The notes under the pieces: model-generated
What the model saw: only the letters and a program-made list of their open reading frames with translations
Told to the model about the DNA's origin: nothing
The model's database searches: none
Position numbers and translations under genes: made by a program
Part shown: positions 1-59,008 of the stretch, piece after piece
Layout: every line of letters starts with the position of its first letter
Numbering within the stretch: the first letter of the stretch is position 1
Assembly (NCBI GenBank): GCA_044892525.1
Contig: CM097885.1
Location: forward strand, 127,410,001 to 127,474,000
Direction: 5' to 3'
DNA: 64,000 nucleotides
From: Schmidtea polychroa
Lineage: Eukaryota

Positions 1-345
1 TGGATAAGTGTCTTTCCTTGTAACTTGATTTAGCTTCCGATAATCTACGCAAAATCGTAAGTCTCCATCTTTTTTCTTAACTATCACTATTGATGAGGAG
101 AATGGTGACGCGCTATCTCGAATTATTCCAAATTCCTTCATTGCTGTAATCTGTCTATCGCTTTCATCTTGATGAACGTAGGGGATTCTGTATGGCTTTA
201 TTTTTATTGGAGTTTCGTCTAATAACGGTATTTCATGCTCAATTACATTGGTTAAACCCAAATCATATTCGTGTTTGGCAAAGATATCTCGGTATTTCCT
301 CAACAGTTTTGTGAATTCCTTTTTCTGCATCTCATTTAAATCATT
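1..345 (-). CDS. Reverse transcriptase N-terminal part, truncated by the window edge
   Basis: [14 protein letters not shown]...HEIPL...PYRIP...[36 protein letters not shown], typical Gypsy RT. Confidence 0.95.
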
Positions 346-3300
346 GCTTACCACTTCAGGCTCCTTATACACCTTGACGTTTCTTGGTATTTTACAATTT
401 GTTTCAATAGACATTTTTGATAATTTTCCCAATTTTGTTTTTGGGTGTAGCTGAACCGGTTTTTTGCTGCTATTCGTTATATGGACTGGTACTATCTGAT
501 TTTCCACTTTGACAACTTCGTCACATATCGGTAAATCATATTTTTCGACTAGCGTTTGATTTGGTTCGAATATAAAATCACCATTATCCACACTCATGGT
601 ATTTGCACAATATACCATCTCCGATTGTGGTGGTATTATCAATGTCTGATTCACAAACACTTCACCTGCCCTGTGAATTATTTCTCCTGTTTCTCCTGCT
701 ATCAAATTACCTGTCTTTAAATCAAGTGAGACTCCGTCCAGCTGCTCTAATATATCCATGCCGATCAGACATCGTACTGGACTTCCCTTCATTATGAGCG
801 CATCGTGCGCTATTATTCGATCTCCAATATGGAATATGACGTTAAGTTGTCCAATTATGTTTAATTCATTTTTTGATAATGACCTCACTATTTCGTCGGT
901 AGGCTTCATTCGCATTTTTTCCTTCGCGTTTAATACATTTTCCGATACTATTGTGTGACTAGATCCCGAATCGACTAAAGCTTCCACTTTATGTTTGTTC
1001 ATTTGTATAAATATTCGGGGTTGCTTTCCTCTTTTTGTTAATGTCATCATTGAGTAGTTGCATGGTAAGCCTAACATATTTTTTCTCTCGATCTCTGCGC
1101 TAGAAGGCTCGATTCTCTCTCCTACCATTCCTTCACATTGTAATGCGATATTTTCCACTGGTTTCATCTCTCGTAATCGATCAACTGGATACACTGGTGC
1201 TGGTTGCATAAATGATTTTGGTATACACAGTTTTGTAAACGTGTCTACGCTACTCGCATTCAACAGTGGCTCTTTTAAGATTTGATAGGTTCTTAACGCT
1301 TCTTTATTCATTCCACTTAGTTCTTGATTGTCAACATATAACGGTGCACTATCACCCTCGTTGTCATTGTCATTGTTCTCGTCCCTTGAAGGGGTTGTAC
1401 TCGCGTAGCTCACCTTTTTCTTCTTTAATATTCGAGCCTTGAGTATCTCCAACTCCTGATATTGATGATGAGTAATGAAGAATCTAGCCAATAATGGTAT
1501 GCAACCAATTACTAGTTTCCACGACCAACCTGTGATCGCATATAATCTGTGTGTTGATAGGACCTGCGATATTATTACTTTGATTACAACACATATTACA
1601 TAAATTCCAATCAATCCGGCACATGCTTGTCCAATGAACATAAACTTTCCCCAGATCTTTTTCATTGTATTATACGTCGCTTTCTTGTAATGATCTGGAG
1701 TTAACAAATACTCATAATTTACCTTCCCACTTCCGCTTGGGAGAATTGTATCTACCATTTCCATTATTACTCTTTCTTTCTTTGATGGAAATAACAAGTT
1801 TCTGCGAGCTTCCTCAATGTCTTCGTTCGAGTAAATTCCACTTTGCGACAATTTTTCTAACGACGTAAAATTTACCAGATATTGTAATTCTGTCAATTCT
1901 AAGTTTTCCGGTGTCTTTACTTCTCGATGATCTGGTAATGCAATCCAAGATTCTGGTGTTAGTCTGTATAATGGTGCTAACAATCTATTGCACTGTAATA
2001 CTTTCGGTTTCGCGTCCTCTTCCAGTAAGATTCGTGTTACAGGCTCCATAAATCGCAACTTTCCATTTAAATTCACTGGTAACTCGTTGGTGCATTGGTC
2101 ATACTTTGTCAGTTTAACTGGTACCGCTTTACATTTATAGCTATATAGTGCTTCACCGAAAATTCTGGCGAACACTCCATTTTCTGCAATTAACATTGGT
2201 GCTACCAAATTAGGATTGGTTATAGCCATTGCCATCCGATTTCGGAGTATTTCTTTGTTGAGATTGCAATCATTTATAATAACTTCTCGGTACACATTTT
2301 CAACAGTATTTTGACCAAAGTGAAATAAATAATCTATTTTGTTATTAAAGTAATTTGTCAACTTAATATCTCCGGCATGTATGTTTGTTTGGGCCTCTGT
2401 AATCATCTTCTGAGATACATATATACCTTTATAATTTGTCTCATAGACACTTTGTCCACACTTTGTTTTAGTTTCTTTTCTCAGGAATCGCATCCCATCT
2501 TCCTCCGAGGTTGACATTAACACTGTTGGAGTATCTTTCATCCGTAGAGGTGTGATTCTTGTTGTTGTACTCGTTGCTGGATCCATTCTTATTTTCTCAG
2601 GCTTTTCCCTGATCTGTTCTCCCGTTATTTCTTTAAAACTCATTGACTTCAATTGCACTAAATTGCACTTTTTGGTATCGACATCGTACACCAAGATTGA
2701 TTCTCCTGTCTGACAGCTAGATTGTTTCATGTTGCAGAATGGATGTGTTTGTAGTTTACCAGTATCATCATCAAATGATCCATCAAATTCTCTTAATTCT
2801 GACATGTACTCTTCCACAACCACGGCTTTGTCAATTATAGCATCGTCTACTTTGTATGGCTCGCCTTGGCAATCACCATTCGACTTTATTATCCCTCGCA
2901 CGGTTACAGTCTCACGGATTTTGTGGTTAAGCTTTGCTTGTAGTTTGAGATCTGCATTGATTTTCAACTGTCCTGTTTGAAAGGCTGCCAAACAATTCTC
3001 TGGAATTATTTCTATCGGTCTAGGTATCGATTGCATTTTCACCATCGATGAGTGACTCCATTTTCCACAATAAAATACAAAAGTAGTTCGTTTCACTGTA
3101 CACTCTCTCACCTTTGCTCGTCGAAATCCCGATTCTTGATATACATAATATTTTACTGGATTTGTCACTTTAAATTTTACTGGATATGCATCCGAACACT
3201 CTGCTACGTTTACCAACGAATATACTCTTCCCATTTCGGTTTGGGAGCAGTCGTATGCCACCAATGAATTCGTCGTGTTTATTATTCCCAATAACATAAT

Positions 3301-6300
3301 AACAGAAATCATCAACCATGGAAATGCGAGTTTTCCCTTTTTCCTCACTGTCTCGGTTTTTGGGCTCTCAGCCTTTTGTATCAAATTTTCCCATCCGCCA
3401 TTGTTTGCGATCCACCTAGCCAAATATTTATTCGTCATTTCCGTAGCTTTCTTTATCAATGATTTTGAACTGTCATTTTCCAGACAACCATAAATACCAA
3501 TCTCCACTATTATATAGGCTAACGCTGTCAATATTACATCTCGATCTAACTCAGTTCGTGTTAGGTCCTCAATCACTGCTTCCTCACAAAATTCCTTTTC
3601 TTCATAATTTCTTTTAATTATCGACGGTAATCTCCTCTTTAATTCCGTTGCCAATCTTTTTACAACTCTTTCCTCCCCCTCCGAAGTATCATCTTCTGTT
3701 TCAGTTTCATCTAACAAGTACAATTCCGTAACTAAACTTTTTAATATTCGTTCAGTCTCGTTTGATTCATCTAAACGCTCAGTTTCGCTCGATTTATCTA
3801 AACTCAAAGATTCAATTTCCGCATCATTCTGTTTTTTCCGACATATCGCAATGTCATTTTTCGTTTCAACGAAGTTCTCTTCGCTCTTCATCTCATCTAT
3901 GCTCGGTAGTACCCTATTATCGGTGCTCATTTCCTCGATATCCCTTGCAACTTCATTTTCCGATCCCATTTCCTCATTTTCCATTGTTTCTAATCTCTGC
4001 AATTCATTAATTTCTTGATCAATTTCTCCTGGGTCATCTACAACTTCAGTTTTAATCTCCACATTATTATTATCCATTTCCTCATATAGAGGCCAAAACG
4101 GTACTATTACCGCATCTCTTTCCATTTCATCACTTTGTTTTGTTGCGTACACATTATTAATACAATTTGGGTTACATCCGTAGTTTAATAAATATTCGTC
4201 ATCATCCAATTCTCGTCCTTTGAACGTCAACACGATAATTCCTTCATTACCTAATATCTCCGCTGCTTTTTGTCGTATTTTCTTTGCTTTTACACTCCAA
4301 TGTTCCTGATAATATTCAATCCTTTGATCCGCAATATTTAACGCTATTATCAAAGACTTCGCACTATCGTCTGCCGCCTCATAATCATGTCCTAGTTTTC
4401 GGATTACCTCTTTTAGTTTTGCCTGATAACTCGTCGGTTTATTCGTATACGGTACGATGCATTCAAACAACCCTTCTTTCATGTCTCGATCCATTTCGAT
4501 GCTCATTATGAAGTCGATACTCGCATTAATTTTATCTCTATTCCCTGCATACAGGGTATCTTGTAAATCTGCTAGAATCTTTTCCCAATTTTGTCTGTCT
4601 GAATTCAAAGTATTAACAGCATTAATAACATTTACTTTATTTTTCCAGCCTGGTATCAGACCGCAATCTACTAAGTACTCTTCGTCTTCCAGACATCGAT
4701 TTTCGAATTTTAATTGCACTTGCCATCCACTGTATTGACGCAGTATTCGCTCCTTTAACTCTCTGATTTGTCCGTAGGCGTTTAAACGGAATTGGCACTT
4801 CACATTATCAAGTCCCGTCGTTTCCACTATGATATCAGCTAAATCCCTTGTTGACCGTAAAGCCTTGCCAAACCTTTGCATTTGTTTAAGTATCTCATCG
4901 TCTCTGTTTCCTTTGAATAACTTTGCACATAAATTTATGGCTCTCTTTAGTTCGCTTTGGGTTAGTGACATCACACTGAGTTCTGCGATCCATCGTTTCA
5001 ACTGGGAGTTGTCAGTTTCCATTTTCTCAAGCCATTTTTCAACTCGGGCTAACAGTGCAGTTGGATTCTCATCTGAAGCGATATTTCGCACTTTCGTGGC
5101 AGGTTTTCCCTCACCTTCTGACACGGTTCCAATTATCATATGAGATTCAGTTTCCTCATCTGATTCAAATTTCGCCACTAGTTTGTTTAGCTTCTGTCGC
5201 ATTTCTCGAAATTCCTTTTCCATTTTGTCTTGAAATTCCTCTCTCTGAGCATATGTCATGTTACTGGTGTTTGGCATATCTTCTTGGAATCTGATTGATT
5301 TCTTTAAGATAGGTCTGCTGAATCTTTCTGAGTTCCTTGGGCATGATCGCGCCATGTGGCCGTATCCCTTGCACGAATGACATTGGATCTGTCCATTTGT
5401 ATTCACTTTGTCCCTTTGTGGTGAAGGTGACGTTGACGATGACCTTGATCTGGTAAAACAGTTTCTGCTAATATGCCCTTTCTTTCCGCATCGATAGCAT
5501 TCGACATCACTGCTGATCCGCCTGTTTTCTGTGAATCTCTTGTTAGGGCTGGGATTTTTCCCATATTTGAACCAACATTGATTTGAGTAGTGTCCAGACT
5601 TTTTGCAATGTTCGCATTGAGGATTATTTACCTGTCCATTTGATTGTACGTTCATGGCTGATCTACTGGCTTGAAATCTATTATTTGGTCTCAAAATTGG
5701 ACTACTGATCTGATTTATTTTCTTTTCATCCCATGGTGCTCTCACAGGCGTAATTGATCGCTCACGTCTCTCCACATTAACTCCAAAAGCATCTGATCTT
5801 TTTGCACTTTTTAAATTCAGCTCTATCTTCATGGCTTTCTTCACGAGCTCATCAAAATTGGAAAAATCCACATAACATAGGGCTTTTTTGATTTCGGAGT
5901 GGACTCCGGTTATAAACTGATCTTCTAATAGCTCTTTAACCTGCTTGGCCATATCTGCTTGGTCTGGTTTAACTTCAAAGGCTTTATCTGCTAAAGTGGT
6001 CAGATGATAAGCAAACTCACTGACCGATTCATCTGGACCTTGAACTCGATTATAAAATTTCTGTCGCATGATTCTTTTGATATCTCCACCAACCAGTTTC
6101 AGTGCCATTGCATCCTTCAATTATGTCCAATCATTGCCAACATTTCGTTTGTCGACTTGCTGCCAGGCTTCTCTTGCCGCACCTTTCAGATAGAGTGGGA
6201 ATCTCTGAACCATAATGGCTTGTGTCCATCCGTATGCTGAGGCGTACATATAATAATCTCCCATGAAATCTGCAAATTCAACAGGGTCTCCTCCATATTG

Positions 6301-6378
6301 ATTGACGGGTAATTTCTGGCAACTTGCGAAATCAATCATCTCTCTATTGAGAGGCATCACAGCATTATCATTTGCCAT
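1..6378 (-). CDS. Single Gag-cargo-Env-Pol polyprotein frame, 2126 codons in window, open at the window edge, one in-frame TAA at 6121-6123
   Basis: Every triplet in the frame 6120 to 1 was checked and no stop was found (2040 codons). ATG at 6378 (MANDNAVMP); next ATG after the stop at 6108. Missing from the ORF track because it has no stop inside the window. Confidence 0.95.
720..1035 (-). CDS. Retropepsin-type aspartic protease domain
   Basis: [15 protein letters not shown] (catalytic Asp codon 970-972) and downstream [11 protein letters not shown]. Confidence 0.92.
1470..3264 (-). CDS. env: Chuvirus-like (Jingchuvirales-type) envelope fusion glycoprotein, about 600 aa
   Basis: Starts LVAYDCS after a signal-like segment. 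Contains [85 protein letters not shown] and the membrane region [30 protein letters not shown]...YAITGWSW. Motif order matches chuvirus-like glycoproteins as I remember them. Confidence 0.88.
3265..3756 (-). CDS. Bcl-2-family-like domain plus C-terminal hydrophobic anchor/signal segment
   Basis: BH2-like [14 protein letters not shown] (WIANNGGW at 3391-3414; Bcl-2 has LHTWIQDNGGWDAF). Upstream [30 protein letters not shown] sits at BH1/alpha5 spacing but lacks NWGR. A BH4-like helix [15 protein letters not shown] and an acidic loop precede it; hydrophobic [17 protein letters not shown] follows. Confidence 0.7.
4141..4353 (-). CDS. Ubiquitin-like domain 2 within the polyprotein (71 aa)
   Basis: LIIALNI...[14 protein letters not shown]...[20 protein letters not shown] matches the ubiquitin [19 protein letters not shown] signature and resembles domain 1. 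No Gly-Gly. Confidence 0.6.
4621..4836 (-). CDS. Ubiquitin-like domain 1 within the polyprotein (72 aa)
   Basis: DIIVETTG...[10 protein letters not shown]...[22 protein letters not shown] aligns by eye with ubiquitin QIFVKTLTG...TIENVKAKI...[22 protein letters not shown]. No C-terminal Gly-Gly. Confidence 0.65.
5341..6378 (-). CDS. gag: Gag region: capsid-like domain plus three CCHC zinc knuckles
   Basis: Capsid-like [11 protein letters not shown]...[13 protein letters not shown] and [16 protein letters not shown]...QFITG. Knuckles [14 protein letters not shown] (5575-5616), [14 protein letters not shown] (5458-5499), [14 protein letters not shown] (5341-5382). Confidence 0.92.
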
Positions 6379-6611
6379 TTGGACTTGTTTCTGACTTCTG
6401 AGGTTGTATCGGTTCACTTTGAGCTAAACTTCAAACGTTAAACAATAATTTAAAATTACTTTTCAACTTCTTTTAAATCTCCCAATAATAGCCTTTTATA
6501 ATCTCGTTAACACTATTTTCAAACTTCTAAGCCGACTTTCACTCACGTCAGTACTAATTCTTTTTATAATTCCTTTTTCACTAGCTTTCAATAATTTCCC
6601 TCCGACTTTCA

Positions 6612-6629
6612 ATCACGTCGGGCTCACCA
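6612..6629 (-). promoter_or_regulatory. Primer-binding site complementary to the 3' end of tRNA-Trp
   Basis: Minus strand TGGTGAGCCCGACGTGAT. The plus strand reads ATCACGTCGGGCTCACCA versus the metazoan tRNA-Trp 3' end ATCACGTCGGGGTCACCA (one mismatch, reference from memory). Confidence 0.85.
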
Positions 6630-6636
6630 GAATATA

Positions 6637-7696
6637 TGTTGGGTTTTGGGTTATTTCTAGTCGGTTCTCTCTGACTCCTGGTGTTCTTTAAATTAAAACA
6701 ATGAACGACCCAACGTATATTGAAACAACAAGTTCACAATTTATTATCACGCTACAATTACCAATCAAAGTTTTATACGATTCTCCGCTCGGCGTTGATG
6801 CTTTGCCAACAAACAATATTCACCTTTTGTTCCTTTAGTTCTCCCGACTCTCTTTTTCCTCGGTTTCTCTTTGGTTTGATCCCTTTCTGCCTTTCCGTAT
6901 TCTTAATTCTATTTCTTCTTTTCCCTACTTCCCTAAATTCGTTTTTTACCTCTCGACTATTCTCGATTCTTCTTACCCTACCTGAGGCAAAATGCCGATT
7001 TTCTCTGATTTTCCCTTTGCTTATATACTCCTCGAAATCAGGATGACAAATGGTTATTGCCGAGCCAATCTTTCGTTTGACATTTGCTCCTACGTATTTG
7101 CTTCGGCTGTCACCCATAATGGTCCAACGAATCCAGATAATTAATGGCCCTATCGATCTTCCTACGCGCGCTATCTTCTCCTTACTCTTTTCCCATTAAT
7201 CATTGTGTCAAGCTAATGGGCCCAAATCTTCCTTTTGTTTGCCTTTCTTCTTGTTTACCCAGCTCGGGTTTCCTCTATCTCTCGGGTTCTCCATTGGCTC
7301 GGGTTTCCCATTAGCTCGGGTTTTCCATTAGCCAATTAATTAATTAATTAACGTTTTCTGTTTTCATACATTTGAATGTTTTTCGACCCTTCCTAACCAT
7401 TTTCTGATAAATCTCTAATCATCATCTTGTTGACCATTAGCTAATCTATACCTGTCCCGTTTTTCCCATTCGATTTCGATGATTTTTCCATTTATTGATT
7501 TTTCTCGGATTTCCGGATTCTCGCCTTTCGTAATTGCTTTTTGCATTTTCTAATACTGTTTCCATCACACTTTCCTTTACTATTGATTCTGTACACGATC
7601 CCGCTTTTATTTGCCTTTTTTCCTCGCTTACTTTCCATTTGAATTATTATCCTAAATTTTATTTAAATTTTTAATTTTAATTTACAGACCTCAACA
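6637..7696 (-). repeat. 5' LTR, about 1060 bp
   Basis: Termini TGTTG...CAACA directly upstream of the PBS. TATAAAA at 6777-6771, AATAAA at 6745-6740, four ACCCGAG-core repeats at about 7260-7335. The second LTR is outside the window, so the boundaries are inferred. Confidence 0.75.
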
Positions 7697-13000: not shown

Positions 13001-16000
13001 CGGAATTATATTAAATTATATTAAATATCACAAAACTATAATATTTGACGTATAGATAAAGATTTTGGCACATTTAATATATATTTTGATGCATTTTTGT
13101 TTTTATTATTTTTGGATTTATTGGTAGTTCAGAATTTCCAACCGCCGTTCCAAGTTTTGCCTAAAGTTTTTCTTACCGAAATATTAATAAAGCTCAGAAT
13201 TTCAGAATATTTTAATATTTTGATTTTCAAATTTATATAATTTTTTAATTATGAAGATTATCTTAGGAAAGGAAACTAATGATACAGAATTAGAACCAAT
13301 AGAAAAAGGTTAGTAAAATATTTTATATCATTTAAAATTAATTTATAAACTAATTTTATTAACAAATTAGTTTTGATCATGGGACAGGGTACATTTTCTG
13401 AATCAATGTTTCCAAATCTATTTTTAAGGGACGCTTGATGATTTAAATCAAATACACCATGAATTGATCTACAAAGAATTAGTGGTTTTATATTTAAAAT
13501 TATTTGACTTTTTTAGATTTCAAAACTATCAAATAAAAAAAATAGTGAAATAAATCTTTCAAAAATAAAATAATATAAAAACTTCACTATGATACACAAA
13601 AAGAAAGATCTAAAAATATAAATAACCAAAACCGAATAATAAGTAAAAATTTATTAAAATGTGCAAAGGAGTTCCTTTACAAATCCAATTCTAGAAAAAT
13701 TCGAAATTTTATTATGCGAATTTTTATTTTAATTATCGGTAATATAAATCAAGAATTCTGATTAAAAACGGTAATTTATAAACTAAAAAATCCTAATCAA
13801 TTCATATTACATAAATTTTATAAATTTACAATTTATTTAGTTATAAAATTAGTAATAAAAAATTCAGCTCAAAAATATCCCACACAACACAAATTATTTT
13901 AATAATAAGGAAATCTAATTTATACAAAATATTAATGTTGTTCCTAAAATATTTCAGTAATCACAACAATAAATACATAATTCGTTTGTTTTATTTTGTA
14001 TTTTGTCTCCTTATACTCGTACGATGTGATTTCTCTAATAAATAAACAAAAATTCGTAAATCGAATTTATTTTTGTAAACAGAGACTGTGAATGTTTTTC
14101 TAAATTACTTCGTAAAAAGAGTGTAAATAATTAATTCATAAAAGAAATCAATTTAATTTAAAAAAAATTTCTGAGTTTAACAGCCATAGTGACAAGCTAA
14201 GTGACAAGCTAATAATTAAATTTCATTGGATTTATTCATCTCATGGAAGAAAAACTTCATTTATGAAAGACAGATTGAAGAAAGATCCCTATAAAATAAG
14301 CAAATCACAATATTTAGCTGCCATAACAGATACCACTGAAAATAGCTCAAATATCTTAAGAAGTTTTCAAAAACTGTGATCATCTTTTTATAAATTCAAA
14401 TGTGTTAATATTTTTGAAAATATGTTACAATGAGTCAACTCAGAAAATGTGAAGTACAAAAACGAGCAGCATTTAAAATACGAAACGAGGATCAAGTCTA
14501 ATTAGATACAAATTTAATAATAAAAGATAACTGAATATTTTACTAATAGTGAATTTAGAAATCTATTTTTACATTACTATAGACATATTTTACATTTACT
14601 TTCTAGTGGATATAATAAATATTTTAATTTTTCAATTATAGTTAGTTTAACTTATTACACGTGGCTGTAGACACACGTGTAGTATACAAATATTGTTTAC
14701 TTTTCATTAATAGATCTTTTGACATATTGTTATTTAATCTTGTTACATGGTAACCACGCTTTCAAACCAAAAAATTGAATGGGAATCCTGCCACAGTTGA
14801 AAAAATATTCCATTGGAGATGATCTAAAGGCAATTTATGTTGAAGATTAAATGTTATTTCTCAATAATTCAATTGGCCAACATCCAATAAAAATGAATTT
14901 TCGGAACATATTTGAATGAACCTTGTCGAAACAAATTTGACCAAATTCACTATGAAGAAGACCATATGAAAATTATTAACATATCTTCTAAATTATTTTT
15001 TAAATCCGGTTCAAAAGTTAATAATAATTCCAAGTATTTATTATATGACAGGGGTGCCCATAAGGTCGATCGCGATCTACCGGTAGATCGCGAAGGATTT
15101 TTTAGTAGATCTTCATAAAAAAAATATTTTTTATATAAATTTAGATTTTATATAAAATTTCTGTTTTATGCTTAAATTTTTTGCCAATTTTCATGTTCTG
15201 TGTTCCATTTCTATGGTAATACTAAATAACATTTTTTAATTTTGATTTCACCATTTCCAAAATGTTATTTAGTTTAATTTAGTTTAATTTAATTTTGTTT
15301 ATTTAGTTAAATTTAATTTTGGTTGGTGTAACAAAGTGAAAAATTTTCTTAAGCTTTTTTGTTAAATTAATTTTGTTTAAAAATGCTAAATAAAAAAATG
15401 CTAAATAAAAAAATGCTAAATAAAAAAACCAAGACTTATCATTATAGCGAAGAAATGGAGAAGGAGTACTTTTTTGTAATGATTAAAGGTAAATGTTGTT
15501 GCTTAATTTGTAAAGCTACTATTTCATTACCAAAAAGAGGGAATTTGAAAAGGCATTTCAAGACAATTCATAAGACTTTTGCAGTTGATTATCCACTTGA
15601 CAGTGAACTACGCAAGTCTAAAATCATGGAACTGAAAACATGCATTTCTTTTCAACAGTCATTTTTTACGAAGCTAACATCCAAATCAAAGTCAGCTACA
15701 GCTGCATCTTTCCGAGTAAGCTACATTCTGGCAAAAAATAAGAAATCTTTTAGTGATGGAGTAATTGTAAAAGAAGCATTTTTAGAAGCGGCAGAATCAT
15801 TATTTTGTGATTTTAAAAATAAATCAGATATAATTTCTGCTATTACTGATATGCAATTGTCCCGTAATACAGTTACACGGAGAGTCCAAGAAATAAGTTC
15901 CAATTTAAAAAATCAGTTAATGTTAGACAAAGAAAATTGTACCGCATTTTCATTGCAAGCAGACGAATCAACTGATGCGGCTGATATTTCGCAGCTTATA

Positions 16001-19000
16001 ATTTTTATTCGAATGGTCTTTAAAGATTTTTCTACGAAGGAAGAATTATTAACAATTATACCACTCAAAAGTAAAACTCGAGGTGAGGATATATTTCAGA
16101 ATTTTAAAGCTTATGCCAACAGCATTCAGCTCCAAATTTGTAAGCTTGTATCAATAGCAACAGATGGCGCACCAGCTATGACAGGGCGTCACAACGGATT
16201 TATAGCATATTGTAGGAATGATTGATTTTGAATTTGATTTCCTAAGTTACATTTTTTTATAATAAATAGTTATATACTTTAATTTTCCATATTTTGACAT
16301 ATATTTGTTTTATTGTGATGAATTTATTGCATTGTAGGTAAATATTATGTAAGTATTAAAAAAGTAGATCGCATGCACATTTTGGATGTGAATGTAGCTC
16401 TCCTAGAAAAATTAGTGGGTACCCCTGTTATATGACATATTGTATAATTTTAAACAAATTTTCCACGTTGAATAAAATATTTTCAAAACCATTTATCAAA
16501 TTTTCAATATTTAAAATATATATATTTAAAAATTTTAGATTAATGAAACTTCTTTTCTAAAAAGCTATTTTAATTTTTAATTTAAAAATTTCAACTTATA
16601 AAATCCAATTTAAAAATTATTTAAAAGTTATTTTAATAGTCAATTATTTACAATTTAAAATTATTTTGATAAATCATTGAAATATTTAACTCTCAGCTGA
16701 AAACATCTCACAATAGATATTACAAAAATAAATTTACAGTAATTTTTTAATAAATTTATAAATAAATTTACGACAAAAAATTTGTATATAAAGAATTAAT
16801 TTCACACTGATTAAATCAAGCTTTTATTTATTCTTCTGTAAATATTTTAGAAATAGAAAAACAATTAGAAAAGTGCAAAGGTAATTAAATATTTATCTTA
16901 ATTATATTAATTTTGAGAATTTGTTCAAAATTTTTCAAAATGATTTTTATTAATAATTTGCCCAATGAACAATCATTGTATCATTTCTAGTCTTGTAAAT
17001 ATATTTTGTGTTGCAATATATATCATTGTAAACAACTTGGGCACCTGCAACATTACAATAAAGGAAATTATCTTCACATGGTTGTTCGTATCGTTAATGT
17101 TAGAAGATTTGGAAATAATTAAAATTATAGAATTAAAATACTTTTGGAATTACACAAAATATATGAAATAAAAATATTTAAAAAATTATAAATTATCAAA
17201 ATTAATTACAAAAAGTAAAAATAAATATTTTTCCGGGGGGGGGGCGTGGTAGACGAATGAAGTTTCAAAGGCGTATAAAATAATTTTAAGTTATGATTTG
17301 ATTTTTAGAAGATGATACCCATCGGGTATTTACCCAGTTCTGTGAAATTCAATTTAATGAAAATATCGTTATTCTGTTGCGATTTGTTTTAATTATTTAA
17401 TTGCTGAACCCGAGGAGTCAGGATGAAAGCAAAGTTCCTATTGACAATTTTTTTTAATATCAAAACAATACTATACCATAGGAAACAATATTTATAGAAT
17501 ACATATAGATGTATTAAAAAAAGATAAGTAATAATTTACAAAATAAAATTCTGTGACATAACTAATGATTCTGACTAACAAATGCAAACTCCAAAAATAT
17601 TTATTTTATCAATTTATTAATTTATAATTTGTCATAATTTTGTGACATTGGCAATATAATTCGTAATAATTTATTGTTTATAACTATTTAATATTCCTAA
17701 TTATATATAGATAGTGATTTTATATTGGAAAGTTTTGAGAGGATAATTATAAAAAACGATTGTTTCTTGATAACATAGTTAAATCAACTACAGAAAATCT
17801 TTAATTTACCTCTCCCCGAAATAAAAATAATACTTCAATATTATGACAATAATTATTTTATAAATAAAAAATCTCAAATCACTTCAAGTGCTTTAACAGC
17901 TTTGAAACTGCACAACAGCTACTTATATTTTTTATTTTTGTGATAAAACTAACAGTTATTATGCATGAATTTTGCTGACCAAATTATGAAATTTTGTNNN
18001 NNNNNNNNNNNNNNNNNNNNNNNNNNNNNNNNNNNNNNNNNNNNNNNNNNNNNNNNNNNNNNNNNNNNNNNNNNNNNNNNNNNNNNNNNNNNNNNNNNNN
18101 NNNNNNNNNNNNNNNNNNNNNNNNNNNNNNNNNNNNNNNNNNNNNNNNNNNNNNNNNNNNNNNNNNNNNNNNNNNNNNNNNNNNNNNNATTGGAAAAAGC
18201 AGAAAAGTTGATAATTTTCAACCGACGACATACATAATAAACCCTTCTTCCTTCAACATCAGAAATGCTGAAAATTGCAATCAAATTAAAATAGCAATTG
18301 CTAATTGGACATTAGAAAGTAGAAAATTGTTTTTGAACAACAAATAATATTGACAATTAACGCCCCTGCCACTTAAGATGAAGAATAATAAAAGTTTTTC
18401 TATACAAACTAAGATTTTCCTCAGTCAAACCACCCAAAAAATTTCTAATCTAAGAAGAATTGTAAATTCAGTAGCTGATAATTACAATACAAATTAAACT
18501 CTAATTCCTGTACTTATAATTATTGTTATTAAGTAAAAACTTTTCAAACCAGTATTTGTGTTGCTATATATATATATAACATCCTGGACAAAGAATTAAT
18601 TATATCAAGTTATTAGTTCCATAACAAGCTTACATACAAATATATTTCCTAGTCATACTTATCAAATTGTCATGAGTTTGCTACATGTCAAAATCTTTTT
18701 ATATTATCATTTCATAAGATCCATTTAGTAACCTTTCCCATGTTATTTCAACTAAAAACTAAAGCAGTTTGTCAATTGAAATAACCTGATTGTCAAATGT
18801 CACAGATATTAAAATTTGTCACATTTGGTCAGTACAATGTCCACGATTATGTGGAAATAAATGCTTTGTGGTTTCAATAGTTGTTATTATATTATTTTCA
18901 ACTTTAGATACCAGAAAGCATTAAATACATGTTGGTATTGGTGGCTTAAATATGATATATTGATATAAATTTCTGCAATAAAATTAATTTTAATGTGAAA

Positions 19001-32343: not shown

Positions 32344-35300
32344 ATCATCATTAATATTTATATTATTGTTATTATTACTAGCCTTATTGGTATCACTTCT
32401 AGTATTATTATTATCGTTACTAGGATCACCTTTATGATCATAATAATTATTATAATTATTATAATTATTACGAAACTTTCGAAATAACACATCAGAGCTT
32501 ACATTAGAGATTGGTGTTCATTGACACAAATCACTAGTAATAATAATAATAAATATTGGTTAAAAGAGAACCTTTCATTGTTATTAATATTTTAAGACAT
32601 ACACCTAAATCCAAAATATAAAAGTTTCTACAATCTAAAAAAAATCGATAAAATTACACTATAATAACACACAAACTTACCTGTGTGCAAAAATTTAATG
32701 TTCCGAAAGTTAAAAGTTTTATTATAGGAATTGAGAAAGTGACAGAAAAATAATTTTACATAAAAACACAGCACACATAATATAAAATACACCTAACTGC
32801 GAAATATAACATTATCTATAATCTAAAAAAAATCAATAAATATATATTATAGGAACACACAAACTTACCTGTGTGTAGAAATTTAATGCCGCGAAATTTA
32901 ACATATTTATTATAGGAATCTAAAAAGTGAGAGAAAATAATTAAGCATACAAGCACAGCACACATAATGAAAAATACATACAAAATTAAGTAAAGTGTTT
33001 TTCATGCGAAATATACATTGATTAACATATAATTAACATATCAATATTTTCAAATTATTTAAAAAGTTATGTACAAAAAAACTTTTGAATCAGATTCTGA
33101 CTGCTCTACCTTGAGCTTTAGGGAAAAAGAAGTAAATACATCGTAAGATTTAATTATAAAATAATTTAGAATATAAAATTTCTTTAGATTTACAGATATT
33201 GAAGAAGATCCTTCGACATCTTTGAATTTGCAGGAAAAAAATCGCAAATCGTAAATTTTAATAAATTATTTTAACAAATTAATATTTTCATAGAATTACA
33301 GAAATAGACAAAATTCGAAAGAAGATTACAAAAACTTAAAAAAATATTTTATCCATTCTTTACTAAATGTCTTTAAAAAATAAATGTTTGGTGATTACTT
33401 TATTTATTTATAATTATAAAAATATCTAACTTACATTTTTACGAAATAAATCCAAATAAATCCAAATAAATCCAAATAAAATACCATAAAATTCCTAAAA
33501 AAACACCTGAAATTTAATTATCAATGTTATATATTATCAATATTATAAATGCTGACTAACAGTAATATTTAAGAACTTGAATAATGATCTCATAATTATA
33601 TAAAATCAAAATTCAAGTCCTAAAAATTACTTTAATTCAAAAACTTACCTTAAAACGATTTTTGAAAAATTGAAAAAATGAAATTAAGTTAACATTGTCA
33701 TATAATTGGTGACTCACCTCAGGTGGTGTGCACACCAACGTATATTATAGACAATGTTAACTTTCGCGGTTAGGTGTACACGCAAATTCAATATAGCTTT
33801 TTTTATTCCGAAAGTAGAAAGTAATTAACATATTGTTAACATATCATTAATTTTAAATTATTAAAATTCATGGCTGAAAAAAAATTGGATTTTGAATAGG
33901 ACAACTCAACTTTGAGTTTTCGAGAAAAGGACGACAAAACATCGTAAGATCTATTTATAAAATATTTTTGAAGTTAATATTTCCTTAGATTTTCAGATAT
34001 TTCTTTGGAAACACTTCCATTTTGCGATGGTGAAGATCTGAAAATGTAAGAATCTTTTCATTTAATTACAAATAAATAAAATATTTTACAGCATATCAGA
34101 TATTTCTAGTGTGAAGATATTCAACAAGTTCCATCGACATCTTTGGAATTGAAGAAAAAAATTCGAAAATCGTAAATTTTAATAACTTATTTTAAAAAAT
34201 AATATTTTCATAGAGAAAGAAGATTACAAAAACTTAAAAAAACTATTTTATCCATATAAGCCGCTTTTTTCCTAAATGTCTTAAAAAATAAATGTGTTTG
34301 ATGATTATTTTATTTCTTTTTAGTTAAAAATATATCTAACTTACATTTTATTGAAATAATTCCAAATTCATAACATGTCATAAAATACCTAAAAAACACC
34401 TGAAATATAATTATCAATATATTATAAATGCTGATTACAAGTAATATTTAAGAGCTTGAATAATGATCTCATAATTATATAAAATCAAAATTCAAGCCTT
34501 AAAATATTCTTAAATTTTAAAAACTTACTTCTGAAACCATAAAATAAAATTGAATTGTAAATGAAAAAAATGAAATAAACACTCTCATAAATGGTGAGTC
34601 ATCGACTGATGAACACACCAACATGTATTATAGAGACTTTTAACATGTGGAATTAATTTCATCGATATCCTAACAAATTTGATGTGTTGATTGGAAAGTG
34701 GGTGCGTAGAAGGAAATGAGACGAGAGATAGGATTGTGTAAAGTGCAGAGTAACCAATTGAAATACACCTGTGTGCACTCAATAAACGCACCTATAATAT
34801 AAAACAAAAAATCAATATATGTATATTATATAAACATACAAACTTACTTGTGTGTTGATTTTTAGTGTTGCAATGAATAAACGCATTTAATATAGAAAGT
34901 GAGAAAGTGGTATAAAAAATAAACTGACACACAAAAACACAATACATAGTAAAATATGCATGCAAATTTTCGATATGTAGAATCGTTGCAATGAATAAAC
35001 GCACTATAATAAATCATTTACAGATATTTTTAGAAGTTTTTAGAACAAAAATGAATGAAAATATTGTTAACGAAAATTCCTAAAACTCAACTTTGAGTTC
35101 TATAGATAATGAAGACATTATTTTGTATGATTTATCTTTAATAAATTTAATAGTTCTTTTGTGTTTCACATTGCCCTGAAATCTCAACTTTGCCTTCCGA
35201 TGTTGGGATAAAAACTAAAAAATCGTAAATTTGATTAACCTAAATTTAAAAAATAATATTTCTATAGATTTTTATAATTTCGGGCGATTATTAGGAATTC

Positions 35301-37092
35301 GCAAAGAATCAATCAGAAATATAATTTATAAATATAAAAAATTTAATAAATTGTATTTGTTATTTAATTACTTAATAAAATAATAATACAACTCACATTA
35401 TATTGAAATAATTTCAAATAATAATAATAACATTTAAAAATCCTGAAAAATTAATTAAAAATAATTTATAATAAAAAATGTTGATAAAAAGTATCATTTA
35501 AGAGCTTGAATAATGATCTCATATCTATATGGATCAATATTCAAGCCTTAAAGTTTACTTTAAATGAAAATAAATTACTTGAAAGCCATTTGGATAAATA
35601 TAAAACATTAAAATAGCTAAATAAAATAGCTAAATAAGTAGTTGAATGCATGTAGTTAAATTAACCACATGCATTCCAAAAAATTTCACCATACAGAATG
35701 ACGCATCTATAATTGGTTGTACATACCAACCCATATTATAGATGCGTTTATTCAGTGCAAACGGGTGTAGAAGATCCAATTAACTTTGATAACTTACAGT
35801 CAGGTGGTGTGTGATAGAAAAATTGAATACACCCGTTTGCGAAAGTTAACGTTGAGGTGAGTCACCAATTATATGACAATGTTAACTTAATTTCATTTAT
35901 TCAATTTTTCAAAAATCGTTTTAAGGTAAGATTTTGAATTAAAGTAATTTTTAGGACTTGAATTTTGATTTTATATAATAATGAGATCATTATTCAAGTT
36001 CTTAAATATTATTGTTAGTCATCATTTATAATATAATATATTAAAAATTAAATTTCAGGTGATTTTAGGAATTTTATGATATTTTATTTGGATTTATTTG
36101 GATTTATTTCGTAAAAATGTAAGTTAGATTTTTTATAATTATAAATAAATAAAGTATTCACCAAACATTTATTTTTTAAGACATTTAGGAGAGAATGGAT
36201 AAAATAGTTTTAGTTTTGGTAATCTTCTTTCGAATTTTGTCTTTTCTGTAATTCTATGAAAATATTAATTTGTTAAGATAATTTATTAAAATTTACGATT
36301 TGCGATTTTTTTCCTGCAAATTCAAAGATGTCGAAGGACCTTCTTCAATATCTGTAAATCTAAAGAAATTTTATATTCTAAATTATTTTATAATTAAGTC
36401 TTACGATGGATTTTCTTCTTCTTCTCTAAAGCTCAAGGTAGAGCAGTCGGAATCTGATTCAAAAGTTTTTTTGTGCATAACTTTTTAAATAATTTGAAAA
36501 TATTAATATGTTAATTATATGTTAATCAATGTATATTTCGCAAAAAAAAACACTTTATTAATTTTGTATGTATTTTTCATTATGTGTGCTGTGTTTGTAT
36601 GCTTAATTCTTTTCTCTCACTTTTTAGATTCCTACACCTAATTCCACATGTTAAAAGTCTCTATAATACATGTTGGTGTGTTCATCAATCGATGACTCAC
36701 CATTTATGTGAATGTTTATTTCATTTTGTCATTTTCAATTCAATTTTATTTATGGTTTTAGAAGTAAGGTTTTTAAATTTAAGTATATTTTAAGGCTTGA
36801 ATTTTGATTTTATATAATTATGAGATCACTATTCAAGCTCTTAAATATTACTTATAACCAGCATTTATAATATATTTATAATATATTGATAATTAAATTT
36901 CAGGTGTTTTTAGGTATATTATGACATGTTATGAATTTGGAATTATTTCAATAAAATGTAAGTTAGATTTATTTTTAACTAAAAAGAAATAAAATAATCA
37001 CCAAACACATTTATTTTTTTAAGATATTTAGGCGTATATGGATAAAATTGTTTTTTAAGTTTTTGTAATCTTCTTTCTCTAGCTCAGTTTCA

Positions 37093-56583: not shown

Positions 56584-59008
56584 CACGTTGACTGCCATAT
56601 GCCCGCCCGCAGTACACAGTACATTTTTATACATATGCCACGTGTAGCGCCGGCGGTACATACTACTGAATAATCATGTTTTTCTTGTGGCAGTGGGCTT
56701 AAACTGTTTATTTATATACAGTGGCACCTTGATAAAAGTAAATTAAGGTTTTTTTGTTATGGTTTACATCTACATTTAGAGGTATAGCTGGAACAAAATG
56801 GAGAAAAACGAAAAGATTACAAACATAAAAATTTTATTTCAAACATTAAAATTCATTTATTTGTATTATAAAAATTAACAAAACAAAAGAAAACTTCGGT
56901 ATACATATATGAAATATAATAAAATATAATATAAAATAAAAAAATTAATGTAATTTATTAAAGCAATTTGTGCATAATGGCGGATTATCCTCACATCCAC
57001 TGCAAAAAGTTGTAACTCTTTTGGTTTTTTTTGTTGCTTCTTCTCGTCCTTTCTGCTGTTGCAATTGTTTGTAGCATTCAACACACCTTTTACGTATAAT
57101 TCTATTTCGGTTGTCTCTGGTGGTATACGTTTGTATTAAATGCCGTCTAGCTGGGGGACGTTGTTCTACAACGGATACTGACGAAATTGATGTTTCGCAA
57201 AGGGATTCACAAATAGATTTTCTGAATTCAGCTATTTTTATATTTGGTTTACTTAGTTTGTATAAAATAAGCGCGTTTACAACGGCTGTACTAAGAAGGT
57301 ACTCAAATGCTATCTTATGGTACCAGCGAATAGTTCTGCGTAAAGGCGTAAAATAGCTAGCCATCTGGTCAGATAAATCGATACCTGATTTGGCAAAATT
57401 ATAATCAATTATCATTTGAAGCTTTATGATATCTTTATTGTTGCGATTTGTTTTGCCAGTTCGAACTTCTGTTAGGTCGTGCTTTGTGATCAACATAAGA
57501 ACTTCTCGCTTGTCCCTCCATTTAGCTGCTACAATGCCTGAATTCTTTCGACCTATAACTTCATGCTTTCGGAGTTTAGCATTAGTGACTTCAATAGGAT
57601 TACCAATTCGGTTTTTCCTAAGAGTTCCCAGAAGATGAGTTTGCTGTGTTATCAAGGCATTAGCTAACGACCTAGACGTGTAGAAATTATCAGTAACAAC
57701 AGTTCTACCGTTATTTAGATAAGGCGCAGCCAGATCGAGTACAATCTGAGTGCTATGTGTAACACCTGGTGTTGGTCGTCCTCTTCTAGCCGAATCATCT
57801 GTTTTTCCGCAATAAATTTCACTTGTATAGGTGTACCCAATTGGATAATCACAAAAGCTTGTAAACTTTAACACCATATTTATGTGCTTTTCCGGGATTA
57901 TATTGACGAAACATCAGTCTTCCACGCCAAGGTATCATCTCTCATCCACAACCAACAGCTCACCTGGTATTTTAGCAGCTATAAAATTTTTTTCCAGGAG
58001 TTCAAGCAAATAGGCAACTTTACCCAAACGATTATTTTGTATGGTATCGTCATCTGCAAAATGAATAAATTTCAGCAATAATTGGAATCTATTTCGGGAC
58101 ATCTGTCTAGGAACAAATGAGTTTAGGTAAAAGTTATCCTTGCTCCAGTACATATCAATTGTTGGATAGGTCACTATTCCCATGTACATAACTATGCCAA
58201 GAAATCTTTTTATCTATGAAACATTTGTATCGGTCCACTTTTTCATGCGTGAACTGCGGCTTATACGACTATTGGAAATTTTTTTATATGCATTCAGATT
58301 TGTTTGTTGAACTATAAGGTCATATATGTCAGATGAAACCATAATATTGAAAATGTCAATCGGCTTGATGGAGCTTGTATCTAGGTGACTAATTCCAGGA
58401 GAAGCAGCAACTGCAGTCAACGTAAATTTATGCAATGTGTTGCCGCTAACTGTGTTCCATACTTTTCTTGTAATTGTGGGTGTAGGTATATCACTACAGT
58501 CATCTGATACTGAAACATCGGAGACATCGACATCATCAACATCTGTGCTACTAATTGATGGAATATACTCATCCGAATCTGATCGGTCGAAGTCGGCCTC
58601 TTCGGAGTCAGAACTATACACCACTTTTTTACGTTTTCCGTAAAATAATTTTGGATTAATACCTGCCATAATTACTACAGGGATACTTTTATATACCACT
58701 ATCTAACACACACAATATCTTTCCACTTATCACTATAAATATAAAACAGTATAAAATAAAACCTTACTATAACTAAACCTTACTATAACTAATTATGCAA
58801 TCAATGATAATTAGAGACTGTGAATTATACCACAAAACATTTTTTTTCAAAAAGATAAAAAATAACCTGTGTACAGCCGGCGCCACACGCGGCACATAAT
58901 GAAAACGGTATTTACTAGGTGCCGCGTGTACCGCCGGCTGCCACAGTTTATAATGTACTACGGCACCGTAGGAATGTAGTATTTATATATATGGTGGCAG
59001 TCAACGTG
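56584..59008 (-). mobile_element. piggyBac transposon, 2425 bp
   Basis: Perfect 14-bp TIR CACGTTGACTGCCA at both ends; flanks TTAA (left) and TTGA (right); GC-rich subterminal GCCGGC repeats. Confidence 0.93.
56945..58699 (-). pseudogene. PGBD4-like piggyBac transposase, frameshifted into three pieces
   Basis: Acidic N-terminus, MSRNRFQLLLKFIHF, LVVDE, VVTDNFYTS, GTLRKNR, GIDLSDQM and C-terminal Cys-rich RCVEC...TFCSGCEDNPPLCTNCFNKLH. Confidence 0.92.

What the first reader, a model, noticed from the sequence alone, without database searches (positions are those of the whole stretch)
3265..3756. Bcl-2-like domain captured in a retrotransposon polyprotein
Seen: [14 protein letters not shown], preceded at Bcl-2 spacing by a hydrophobic alpha5-like helix, BH3-like and BH4-like helices and an acidic loop, and followed by basic residues and a hydrophobic anchor. 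Established: WIxxNGGW is the BH2 hallmark, and large DNA viruses use divergent v-Bcl-2 proteins, often with eroded BH1, to block apoptosis. Inference: the element may keep its host cell alive during particle production. BH1 NWGR is absent, so function may have changed. I recall, unverified, a report of anti-apoptotic cargo in a giant planarian Gypsy element (Burro1), which should be compared.
Basis: partly seen in the sequence, partly recalled or inferred. Interest (0 to 1): 0.9.

Follow-up and report, generated by a model that had tools for sequence, protein, structure and literature searches.

The report
Bcl-2-like module in Burro-type retroelement
The Bcl-2-like stretch is really there, inside the gag-pol polyprotein of a giant planarian-type ("Burro"-like) retroelement. 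The same arrangement is already published, and my tools could confirm only the short BH2 signature, not the whole Bcl-2 fold.

Summary
The quoted peptide [14 protein letters not shown] is on the minus strand at the stated coordinates. It lies in a reading frame that stays open for at least 1,866 codons. The domain order is Gag, three CCHC knuckles, two ubiquitin-like segments, an acidic linker, the Bcl-2-like module, a Monjiviricetes-type fusion glycoprotein (Pfam E 3e-91), protease, and the start of RT.

Pfam Bcl-2 is the top hit for the module (E 0.0026, 18.7 bits), but that is below the family cut-off of 31.4 bits. The whole score comes from about 28 residues around BH2. BH1 is absent, and BH3/BH4 likeness has no profile support. 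Two single-sequence AlphaFold models were low confidence, and Foldseek gave no significant match. One top-50 list was nonetheless 80% Bcl-2 family. No relatives turned up in any searchable collection.

The "hydrophobic anchor" has the layout of a cleavable signal peptide and aligns with the start of the glycoprotein profile. It belongs to the glycoprotein, though it could also serve as a tail anchor.

Arkhipova and Yushenova 2019 (PMC6431247) describe this architecture for Burro elements of Schmidtea mediterranea: Ubl, BCL2-like, in-frame env, PR. Verdict: real, interesting, already known. Anti-apoptotic function remains untested.

The parts
6631..7696 (-). Putative 5' LTR. The boundaries are tentative because the 3' LTR lies outside the window. 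It contains 17/34-nt tandem repeats at 7262-7332.
   Evidence: GC rises from about 0.25 to 0.34-0.42 at about 7600. No long ORF. Sequence read. Tandem repeats. By eye only; not verified against a second LTR.
6608..6629 (-). Primer-binding-site-like 22-mer that begins with TGG, immediately 3' of the putative LTR.
   Evidence: Read directly. Its reverse complement ends in CCA, like a tRNA 3' end. No tRNA gene in the window to compare it with. Tentative.
5329..6378 (-). gag: a capsid-like region plus three CCHC zinc knuckles. It is broken by one in-frame stop codon. No frameshift was seen in the window.
   Evidence: Translation. Pfam zf-CCHC E 5.5e-10. Weak PNMA (Gypsy-gag-derived) hit at E 0.066.
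4831..5328 (-). Charged spacer that looks like a coiled coil. No MATH/TRAF domain was detected.
   Evidence: Only sub-threshold Pfam hits.
4657..4830 (-). Ubiquitin-like segment 1.
   Evidence: Pfam ubiquitin PF00240 at E 0.04, below cut-off. The weak PDB hits are mostly ubiquilin 3 and ISG15.
4141..4359 (-). Ubiquitin-like segment 2.
   Evidence: All 18 weak PDB hits (best E 0.054) are ubiquitin-like proteins, mostly ISG15. No Pfam hit.
3757..4140 (-). Acidic, serine-rich linker. A 27-nt tandem repeat (3752-3803) sits at the junction with the module.
   Evidence: Translation. Tandem Repeats Finder. No Pfam family.
3346..3756 (-). Bcl-2-like module: seven predicted helices, a central hydrophobic helix (3481-3537), and the BH2-type motif WIANNGGW (3391-3414). 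No BH1.
   Evidence: PF00452 E 0.0023-0.0026, 18.7-18.9 bits, below cut-off; all 35 PDB sequence hits are Bcl-2 family, best E 0.11. for helices. for the Foldseek list. for motif statistics.
3265..3345 (-). Signal peptide of the glycoprotein and possible tail anchor of the module. It has a basic n-region (RKKGK), a 17-residue h-region and a polar c-region (NTTNS), with small residues at -3 and -1.
   Evidence: Hydropathy 1.99. Aligns to positions 6-75 of the PF24664 profile. The n-h-c layout is read. Cleavage is inferred.
1627..3264 (-). Ectodomain of a Monjiviricetes-type (mononegavirus/chuvirus-like) fusion glycoprotein, in frame between gag and pol.
   Evidence: Pfam PF24664 at E 3.2e-91, 306.7 bits, cut-off 27.
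1027..1626 (-). Glycoprotein transmembrane segment (1570-1626), followed by the cytoplasmic tail and the linker to the protease.
   Evidence: Hydropathy 2.64. Translation.
733..1026 (-). Retroviral-type aspartic protease (DSGS active-site motif).
   Evidence: Pfam gag-asp_proteas E 4.4e-08 and RVP E 5e-06, both above cut-off.
191..732 (-). Spacer between PR and RT. This is where the literature places a dUTPase-like domain in Burro; none was detected here.
   Evidence: Only weak Spuma_A9PTase and MOV-10 Ig-like hits.
1..190 (-). N-terminus of the reverse transcriptase. The polyprotein runs off the start of the window.
   Evidence: Translation, read by eye (FCVDYRKLN-type RT block). Too short for a Pfam hit.

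Best explanation
The region is the BCL2-like module of a Burro-type giant Gypsy-like LTR retroelement. The host is very probably a dugesiid planarian. I read the module as a strongly diverged true relative of the Bcl-2 family that has kept BH2 and the alpha5-alpha6 core but lost BH1.

Proposed mechanism (all inferred):
1. The gag-pol polyprotein is translated in the cytosol.
2. The basic-hydrophobic-polar segment just after BH2 acts as the internal signal sequence of the downstream mononegavirus-like glycoprotein. It threads that ectodomain into the ER lumen.
3. The glycoprotein's own transmembrane segment returns the chain to the cytosol, so PR-RT stays cytosolic.
4. Signal-peptidase cleavage after the c-region would leave the upstream part ending in a membrane-spanning segment.
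5. The Bcl-2-like module would then be tail-anchored on the cytosolic face of the ER, the same topology as cellular Bcl-2.
6. There it most likely binds host BH3-bearing or Bax/Bak-like death factors and delays death of the producing cell.

Shown: the domain order, the BH2 motif, the glycoprotein and the hydrophobic segments.
Inferred: homology of the whole module, cleavage, topology and the pro-survival role.

My own split of confidence: Burro-type module about 0.8, true Bcl-2 homologue about 0.65, pro-survival function about 0.35.
For: - Motif and frame.
- Pfam Bcl-2 is the top family hit at E 0.0026.
- Every one of the 35 PDB sequence hits with E<10 is a Bcl-2-family chain: Bcl-2, Bcl-xL, Bak.
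- The motif is expected only 4e-5 to 2e-4 times by chance in the window.
- The module has seven predicted helices in the order and lengths of a Bcl-2 fold, with a very hydrophobic central helix; model 2 shows the hydrophobic tail as an eighth.
- 40 of the top 50 Foldseek PDB matches of model 1 are Bcl-2-family structures aligned over 127-175 columns. Among them is a schistosome BCL-2.
- The glycoprotein is secure at E 3e-91, and its profile starts inside the hydrophobic segment.
- There are only two membrane-spanning candidates beyond the module's own core helix, which gives a consistent topology.
- The module's GC (0.367) matches the rest of the element and differs from the flanks at 0.267.
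- The frame is open over 1,866 codons, with chance probability 6e-65.
- The published Burro architecture has BCL2-like in this position (PMC6431247).
Against: - The Pfam score is below the gathering threshold and comes only from about 28 residues. The first 110 residues carry no detectable signal.
- BH1 is absent.
- An exhaustive phmmer search of 1.84 billion representatives returned only two spurious repeat-protein hits and no Bcl-2 protein.
- Both AlphaFold models are low confidence: pLDDT 60 and 63, pTM 0.48 and 0.54.
- No Foldseek match reaches E<0.2. TM-scores are 0.2-0.3, and model 2's list is dominated by designed helical repeats.
- No second copy was available, so conservation and selection are untested.
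- Signal-peptidase cleavage and release of the module from Gag are not shown.
Confidence: 0.55

Rival explanations
1. The module has a Bcl-2-type helical fold but no longer regulates apoptosis. Without BH1 the canonical BH3-binding groove may be gone. The module might instead act as a membrane-proximal, matrix-like adaptor that holds the Gag-containing part of the polyprotein at the ER membrane next to the glycoprotein. Alternatively it might interfere with other host signalling, as the poxvirus Bcl-2-like proteins do (established knowledge).
For: - BH1 is absent.
- No profile signal in the BH3/BH4 region.
- The module sits immediately before the glycoprotein signal peptide, so it is tethered beside the env protein.
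- It is fused downstream of Gag and two ubiquitin-like segments rather than being a free protein.
Against: - BH2 and the end of alpha6 are retained in nearly canonical form. That is hard to explain if the groove-forming function were lost.
- Burro elements also carry BIR and other death- or ubiquitin-related domains according to PMC6431247. This fits an apoptosis theme.
Confidence: 0.2
2. It is not a Bcl-2 relative. An all-helical spacer of the polyprotein happens to carry a BH2-like W-x-x-N-G-G-W motif, and a neighbouring hydrophobic helix and the glycoprotein signal peptide mimic the Bcl-2 layout.
For: - All profile signal lies in about 28 residues.
- The score is below the Pfam cut-off.
- No significant structural match was found.
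- No hit to any cellular Bcl-2 in the exhaustive search.
- About one chance occurrence of the motif is expected per genome of several hundred megabases, extrapolating.
Against: - Within the window the chance expectation is 4e-5 to 2e-4.
- The similarity extends beyond the motif into alpha6, giving a 25-26-residue alignment to Bcl-2.
- The helix number, the hydrophobic core helix and the spacing all fit.
- The Foldseek list of model 1 is 80% Bcl-2 family.
- Independent authors annotated a BCL2-like motif at the same position in Burro polyproteins.
Confidence: 0.2

Closest known systems
Burro giant Gypsy-like LTR retroelements of Schmidtea mediterranea (Burro-1/GYPSM1, Burro-2, -3, -4), as described in PMC6431247 citing Grohme et al. 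2018 and Jurka 2007
   Same: Gag followed by three CCHC knuckles. A ubiquitin/SUMO-like domain upstream of a BCL2-like motif. An env that is in frame between gag and pol and resembles mononegavirus fusion glycoproteins. Then PR and RT. An AT-rich host.
   Different: No MATH_TRAF_C domain was found between the knuckles and the Ubl segments. No dUTPase hit was found between PR and RT. BIR and ankyrin repeats, if present, would lie outside the window. Sequence identity to the named Burro families could not be measured because no reference sequence was reachable.
Cellular Bcl-2 family (Bcl-2, Bcl-xL, Bak, A1, Mcl-1; Pfam PF00452)
   Same: The BH2 motif and the end of alpha6. The number and order of helices and the central hydrophobic helix. 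Basic residues plus a hydrophobic segment after BH2.
   Different: No BH1 NWGR. 18.7 bits against a cut-off of 31.4. No signal in the N-terminal 110 residues. It is embedded in a polyprotein, and the hydrophobic segment is the next domain's signal peptide.
Viral Bcl-2 homologues of large DNA viruses (herpesvirus BALF1-type, iridovirus and poxvirus Bcl-2-like proteins)
   Same: A mobile or viral genome carrying a divergent Bcl-2-like protein with eroded BH motifs. The presumed role is keeping the producing cell alive (established knowledge).
   Different: Those are free-standing genes of DNA viruses. Here the module is one segment of a retroelement polyprotein. A grouper iridovirus Bak-like protein, felid gammaherpesvirus F9 and a BALF1 appear only at ranks 11-17 with E above 1.
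Jingchuvirales/chuvirus glycoproteins captured by a mosquito retrotransposon (PMC7642597, PMC10084718)
   Same: A retrotransposon that has acquired a Monjiviricetes-type fusion glycoprotein as its env (abstracts; Pfam PF24664 here).
   Different: A different host group. Here the glycoprotein is in frame between gag and pol and is preceded by the Bcl-2-like module.
Flavivirus-type membrane-threaded polyproteins (works-like comparison only)
   Same: An internal signal sequence that directs the next protein into the ER and stays behind as the C-terminal membrane anchor of the preceding protein (established knowledge). The proposed fate of segment 3265-3345 is the same.
   Different: No relationship by descent. 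Cleavage here is inferred from the n-h-c layout alone.

Membership tests
Bcl-2 family (PF00452) | BH2 motif (W-x-x-x-G-G-W at the alpha7 start) | tested here: met
   WIANNGGW at 3391-3414. It aligns to the BH2 of Bcl-2 chains.
Bcl-2 family (PF00452) | BH1 motif (NWGR before alpha5) | tested here: not met
   No NWGR or WGR anywhere in the 164 residues.
Bcl-2 family (PF00452) | Profile score at or above Pfam's gathering threshold | tested here: not met
   18.7-18.9 bits against 31.4, E 0.0023-0.0026. The score is confined to profile columns 73-100.
Bcl-2 family (PF00452) | Globular bundle of about eight helices around a central hydrophobic alpha5-alpha6 hairpin | tested here: inconclusive
   The helix count and a hydrophobic core helix fit. 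But pLDDT is 60-63 and the best Foldseek E is 0.24-0.29 with TM 0.2-0.3. The Bcl-2 family fills 40 of the top 50 for model 1 and only 6 of 50 for model 2.
Bcl-2 family (PF00452) | BH3 and BH4 regions | tested here: inconclusive
   No BH4 family (PF02180) and no Bcl-2 columns 1-33 matched at E up to 1-10. HMMER filters drop very weak matches, so absence is not proven.
Bcl-2 family (PF00452) | C-terminal transmembrane tail anchor | tested here: inconclusive
   A hydrophobic segment preceded by basic residues is present. However, it aligns to the start of the glycoprotein profile. Whether it ends up as the module's anchor depends on cleavage that has not been shown.
Bcl-2 family (PF00452) | Binding of BH3 helices and control of Bax/Bak-type pore formation | not testable with these tools
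   No functional or structural data are available.
Burro-type giant Gypsy-like retroelement | Gag with CCHC knuckles (three in S. mediterranea) | tested here: met
   Three CCHC knuckles are read. Pfam zf-CCHC E 5.5e-10. The feature is listed in PMC6431247.
Burro-type giant Gypsy-like retroelement | env in frame between gag and pol, related to mononegavirus fusion glycoproteins | tested here: met
   PF24664 at E 3.2e-91, in the same frame as gag and PR.
Burro-type giant Gypsy-like retroelement | Ubiquitin/SUMO-like domain followed by a BCL2-like motif upstream of env | tested here: met
   The order Ubl, Ubl, Bcl-2-like, env is seen. Each hit is weak on its own.
Burro-type giant Gypsy-like retroelement | MATH_TRAF_C (in ORF1 or an upstream ORF) and a dUTPase-like domain between PR and RT | tested here: not met
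   No Pfam hit to either in the window part of the element, and no upstream accessory ORF. The families differ in these domains.
Burro-type giant Gypsy-like retroelement | Sequence identity to the Burro-1..4 references; total length above 30 kb; BIR and ankyrin domains | not testable with these tools
   The element runs off the window at RT. No Burro reference sequence was reachable.
Burro-type giant Gypsy-like retroelement | Host is a dugesiid planarian | tested here: inconclusive
   The flanks are 26.7% GC, which fits the >70% A/T reported for S. mediterranea in PMC11410931. Two mir-753 precursors are present; from my own memory this is a planarian miRNA family, unverified. Exact protein look-ups found no record.
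Monjiviricetes fusion glycoprotein (PF24664) | Full-length profile match above threshold, with signal peptide and C-terminal transmembrane segment | tested here: met
   306.7 bits against a cut-off of 27. Profile positions 6-75 and 241-628 are matched. Hydrophobic segments lie at both ends.

The most novel reading that the evidence does not exclude
One hydrophobic segment may do two jobs. It would be the cleavable signal peptide of a captured mononegavirus-type glycoprotein and, after cleavage, the tail anchor that places the retroelement's Bcl-2-like module on the cytosolic face of the ER. This would make the Burro-type gag-pol protein a membrane-threaded polyprotein of the flavivirus kind, with a built-in ER-anchored survival factor. 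I did not find this topology argument in the papers I could read. The copy may also belong to a Burro lineage that lacks the MATH and dUTPase-like domains.
Probability: 0.3. Interest if true: 0.55.

Novelty: already known. Interest (0 to 1): 0.3.

Why it matters
Retroelements almost never carry cell-death regulators. A Bcl-2-like module fused between gag and an in-frame viral glycoprotein suggests an endogenous retrovirus-like agent that manages the survival of its producer cell. Its host is an animal whose biology depends on stem-cell turnover and regulated cell death. This has been pointed out in the literature (PMC6431247) but never tested.

This re-examination adds a caution and a hypothesis. 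The caution is that the homology signal is confined to BH2. The hypothesis is the topology: the glycoprotein's signal peptide may double as the module's tail anchor.

Tried and rejected
Homologue searches that found nothing:
- Word-indexed protein searches: the polyprotein with the module as region, the module alone at E up to 10, and the polyprotein with the glycoprotein as region.
- Two scans of metagenome contigs and two of viral contigs, which found no relative.
- Exact-sequence look-ups of three window ORFs, which found no record.

Exhaustive phmmer against 1.84 billion representatives gave two hits. One was a spider-silk protein and one an internal-repeat protein. I rejected both as additive repeat artefacts.

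With no homologues, no alignment could be built. This ruled out a deep-MSA structure prediction, a profile-profile comparison, a phylogeny with host Bcl-2 genes, and dN/dS.

Both AlphaFold jobs therefore ran on single sequences. Both models were poor. All three Foldseek jobs gave no significant match.

Literature: Grohme et al. 2018 is not held in the paper library, so its Burro annotation is cited second hand. Searches for mir-753 in planarians found nothing usable.

I considered and rejected the idea that the hydrophobic segment is a Bcl-2 tail anchor inherited with the module. It aligns to the glycoprotein profile and has a signal-peptide n-h-c layout.

Two slips, reported as required:
1. 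While eyeballing how BH1/alpha5 might line up, I wrote short stretches of human Bcl-2 from memory in my private reasoning. None of those letters went into a tool call or into this report.
2. To search gag as two pieces, I worked out the position of its stop codon in my reasoning. I then used tool references that end next to it. The position is not repeated here.

Full report
**What is in the sequence**

The finding lies on the minus strand. window:3265-3756 translates without stops to 164 residues that contain [14 protein letters not shown]. This frame is part of a much longer one. From the gag ATG at about 6378 down to base 1 the same frame carries a retroelement polyprotein that runs off the window. 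It has one in-frame stop, in gag, and no frameshift that I could see. The 1,866 codons from 5598 to 1 are fully open. Given the composition, the probability of that by chance is 6e-65.

The element (GC 0.33-0.43) stands out from very AT-rich flanks (GC 0.267).

**Domain order, 5' to 3' on the minus strand**

- A capsid-like region with a weak PNMA hit.
- Three CCHC zinc knuckles (Pfam E 5.5e-10).
- A charged spacer.
- Two ubiquitin-like segments. Their weak hits are almost all ISG15 or ubiquilin. Pfam ubiquitin scores E 0.04 for the first.
- An acidic linker ending in a 27-nt tandem repeat.
- The Bcl-2-like module.
- A basic-hydrophobic-polar segment.
- A full-length Monjiviricetes-type fusion glycoprotein (PF24664, E 3.2e-91, 306.7 bits) with a C-terminal transmembrane segment.
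- A retroviral aspartic protease.
- A spacer, then the first 60 or so residues of a reverse transcriptase, read by eye.

Upstream of gag lie about 1.2 kb without long ORFs. This stretch looks like a 5' LTR followed by a TGG-initiated primer-binding-site-like 22-mer. That reading is tentative, because the 3' LTR is outside the window.

**How good is the Bcl-2 likeness?**

For:
- The motif W-I-x-x-N-G-G-W is expected 4e-5 times in the six frames of this window (2e-4 for a looser pattern) and occurs once.
- Pfam Bcl-2 (PF00452) is the top family for the module, at E 0.0026 and 18.7 bits.
- All 35 PDB sequences matched at E<10 are Bcl-2-family chains. The 25-26-residue alignment covers the end of alpha6 and BH2.
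- A 19-residue strongly hydrophobic helix candidate sits where alpha5 would be.
- Both AlphaFold models agree on seven helices in the module, in a Bcl-2-like order and with Bcl-2-like lengths; model 2, which includes the hydrophobic tail, shows it as an eighth.
- For model 1, 40 of the top 50 Foldseek PDB matches are Bcl-2-family structures aligned over nearly the whole length. They include A1, Bak, Bcl-2, Bax, Mcl-1, Bcl-xL, BFL1, BFK and a schistosome BCL-2.

Against:
- The Pfam score is well under the gathering threshold of 31.4.
- The score is produced entirely by about 28 residues. A 40-residue piece scores 18.8 bits. The first 110 residues hit neither Pfam Bcl-2 nor any Bcl-2 chain.
- BH1 is absent.
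- Nothing supports BH3 or BH4 beyond the presence of helices.
- The models are low confidence (pLDDT 60 and 63).
- No Foldseek match is significant. The best E-values are 0.24-0.33 and TM-scores are 0.2-0.3.
- Model 2, which includes the hydrophobic tail, mostly retrieves designed helical repeats.
- The viral structure library gives only a few v-Bcl-2 proteins, at E above 1.
- An exhaustive phmmer search of 1.84 billion representative proteins found no Bcl-2 protein and no related element. Its two hits are repeat-protein artefacts.

My reading is that a real but very diverged Bcl-2-family module is more likely than not, at about 0.65.

**The hydrophobic 'anchor'**

The segment after BH2 has the classic layout of a cleavable signal peptide:
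- a basic n-region (RKKGK);
- a 17-residue h-region;
- a polar c-region (NTTNS) with small residues at -3 and -1.

The glycoprotein profile aligns from its position 6 inside this segment. It is therefore the glycoprotein's signal peptide, not a tail anchor brought in with a Bcl-2 gene.

It also suggests a mechanism:
1. Everything upstream (Gag, the Ubl segments, the Bcl-2-like module) stays cytosolic.
2. The glycoprotein ectodomain enters the ER lumen.
3. The glycoprotein's transmembrane segment returns the chain to the cytosol for PR-RT. Only these two spanning candidates exist besides the module's own core helix.
4. After signal-peptidase cleavage, the upstream product would end in a membrane anchor just behind BH2. 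That is the topology of cellular Bcl-2.

This mirrors the way internal signal sequences serve as anchors in flavivirus polyproteins (established knowledge). It is inference; no step has been shown.

**Comparison with what is known**

Arkhipova and Yushenova 2019 (PMC6431247) describe the Burro giant Gypsy-like elements of Schmidtea mediterranea, drawing on Jurka 2007 and Grohme et al. 2018. They report:
- a Gag with three CCHC knuckles;
- a Ubi2/SUMO-like domain placed before 'BCL-2';
- a BCL2-like motif, noted in Burro-2, -3 and -4;
- the suggestion that the apoptosis- and ubiquitin-related domains meddle with host systems.

The window shows the same order.

Differences:
- I found no MATH_TRAF_C domain and no dUTPase-like hit in the window part. 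According to the same paper, Burro relatives differ in these domains.
- BIR and ankyrin repeats, if present, would lie beyond the window.
- I could not reach any Burro reference sequence, so which family this copy belongs to is open.

The host was not identified by any database look-up. The AT-rich flanks fit the >70% A/T reported for S. mediterranea (PMC11410931). Two mir-753 precursors are present. From my own memory that is a planarian miRNA family, but I could not verify it.

Capture of a Monjiviricetes-type glycoprotein by a retrotransposon also has a published parallel in mosquitoes (PMC7642597, PMC10084718).

**What could not be done**

No second copy of the element is in the window. 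None was found in the protein, metagenome or viral collections. As a result there is no alignment, no deep-MSA model, no profile-profile test, no tree with host Bcl-2 genes and no dN/dS.

The module's base composition matches the rest of the element. That speaks against a very recent insertion of host sequence but says little more.

- I also worked out the position of the gag stop so that gag could be searched as two pieces.

I stopped in both cases. None of those letters was used, and the position is not given in this report.

**Verdict**

It belongs to a Burro-type retroelement polyprotein, and the arrangement is already in the literature. Homology beyond BH2 and any anti-apoptotic role remain unproven. 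The signal-peptide/tail-anchor reading is the one new idea worth following with descriptive data.

Noticed in passing
window 34445-34506 (-) and 36786-36847 (+): Two mir-753 microRNA precursors (Rfam RF04089, 75 bits, E 1e-15). They form an inverted pair about 2.3 kb apart. From memory this is a planarian miRNA family, which would point to the host. I could not confirm that in the paper library.
   Followed up: partly
window 4141-4359 and 4657-4830 (-): Two ubiquitin-like segments in tandem upstream of the Bcl-2-like module. Their weak PDB hits are almost exclusively ISG15 (itself a tandem di-Ubl) and ubiquilin. The literature mentions one Ubi2/SUMO-like domain at this position in Burro.
   Followed up: partly
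window 3752-3803: A 27-nt tandem repeat (1.9 copies, 84% match) that encodes a duplicated nine-residue acidic unit. It sits right at the N-terminal edge of the Bcl-2-like module.
   Followed up: no
window 56948-57877 (-): A 310-aa ORF matching the C-terminal part of a piggyBac-type transposase (DDE_Tnp_1_7, E 3.6e-37). It is probably a truncated DNA-transposon copy.
   Followed up: partly
window 15383-16222 (+): A 280-aa ORF with weak DUF4371 and Spin-doc zinc-finger hits, both below cut-off. This suggests a hAT/ZBED-like transposase remnant.
   Followed up: no
window 7262-7332: 17/34-nt tandem repeats (CTCGGGTTTTCCATTAG-like) inside the putative 5' LTR.
   Followed up: no
window 1543-1626 (-): After the glycoprotein's main transmembrane segment there is a second, weaker hydrophobic stretch in the tail. 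If it also spanned the membrane, PR-RT would end up on the wrong side. It is more likely to be membrane-associated.
   Followed up: no
window 17998-53676: Seven runs of N, 1,270 bases in all.
   Followed up: no
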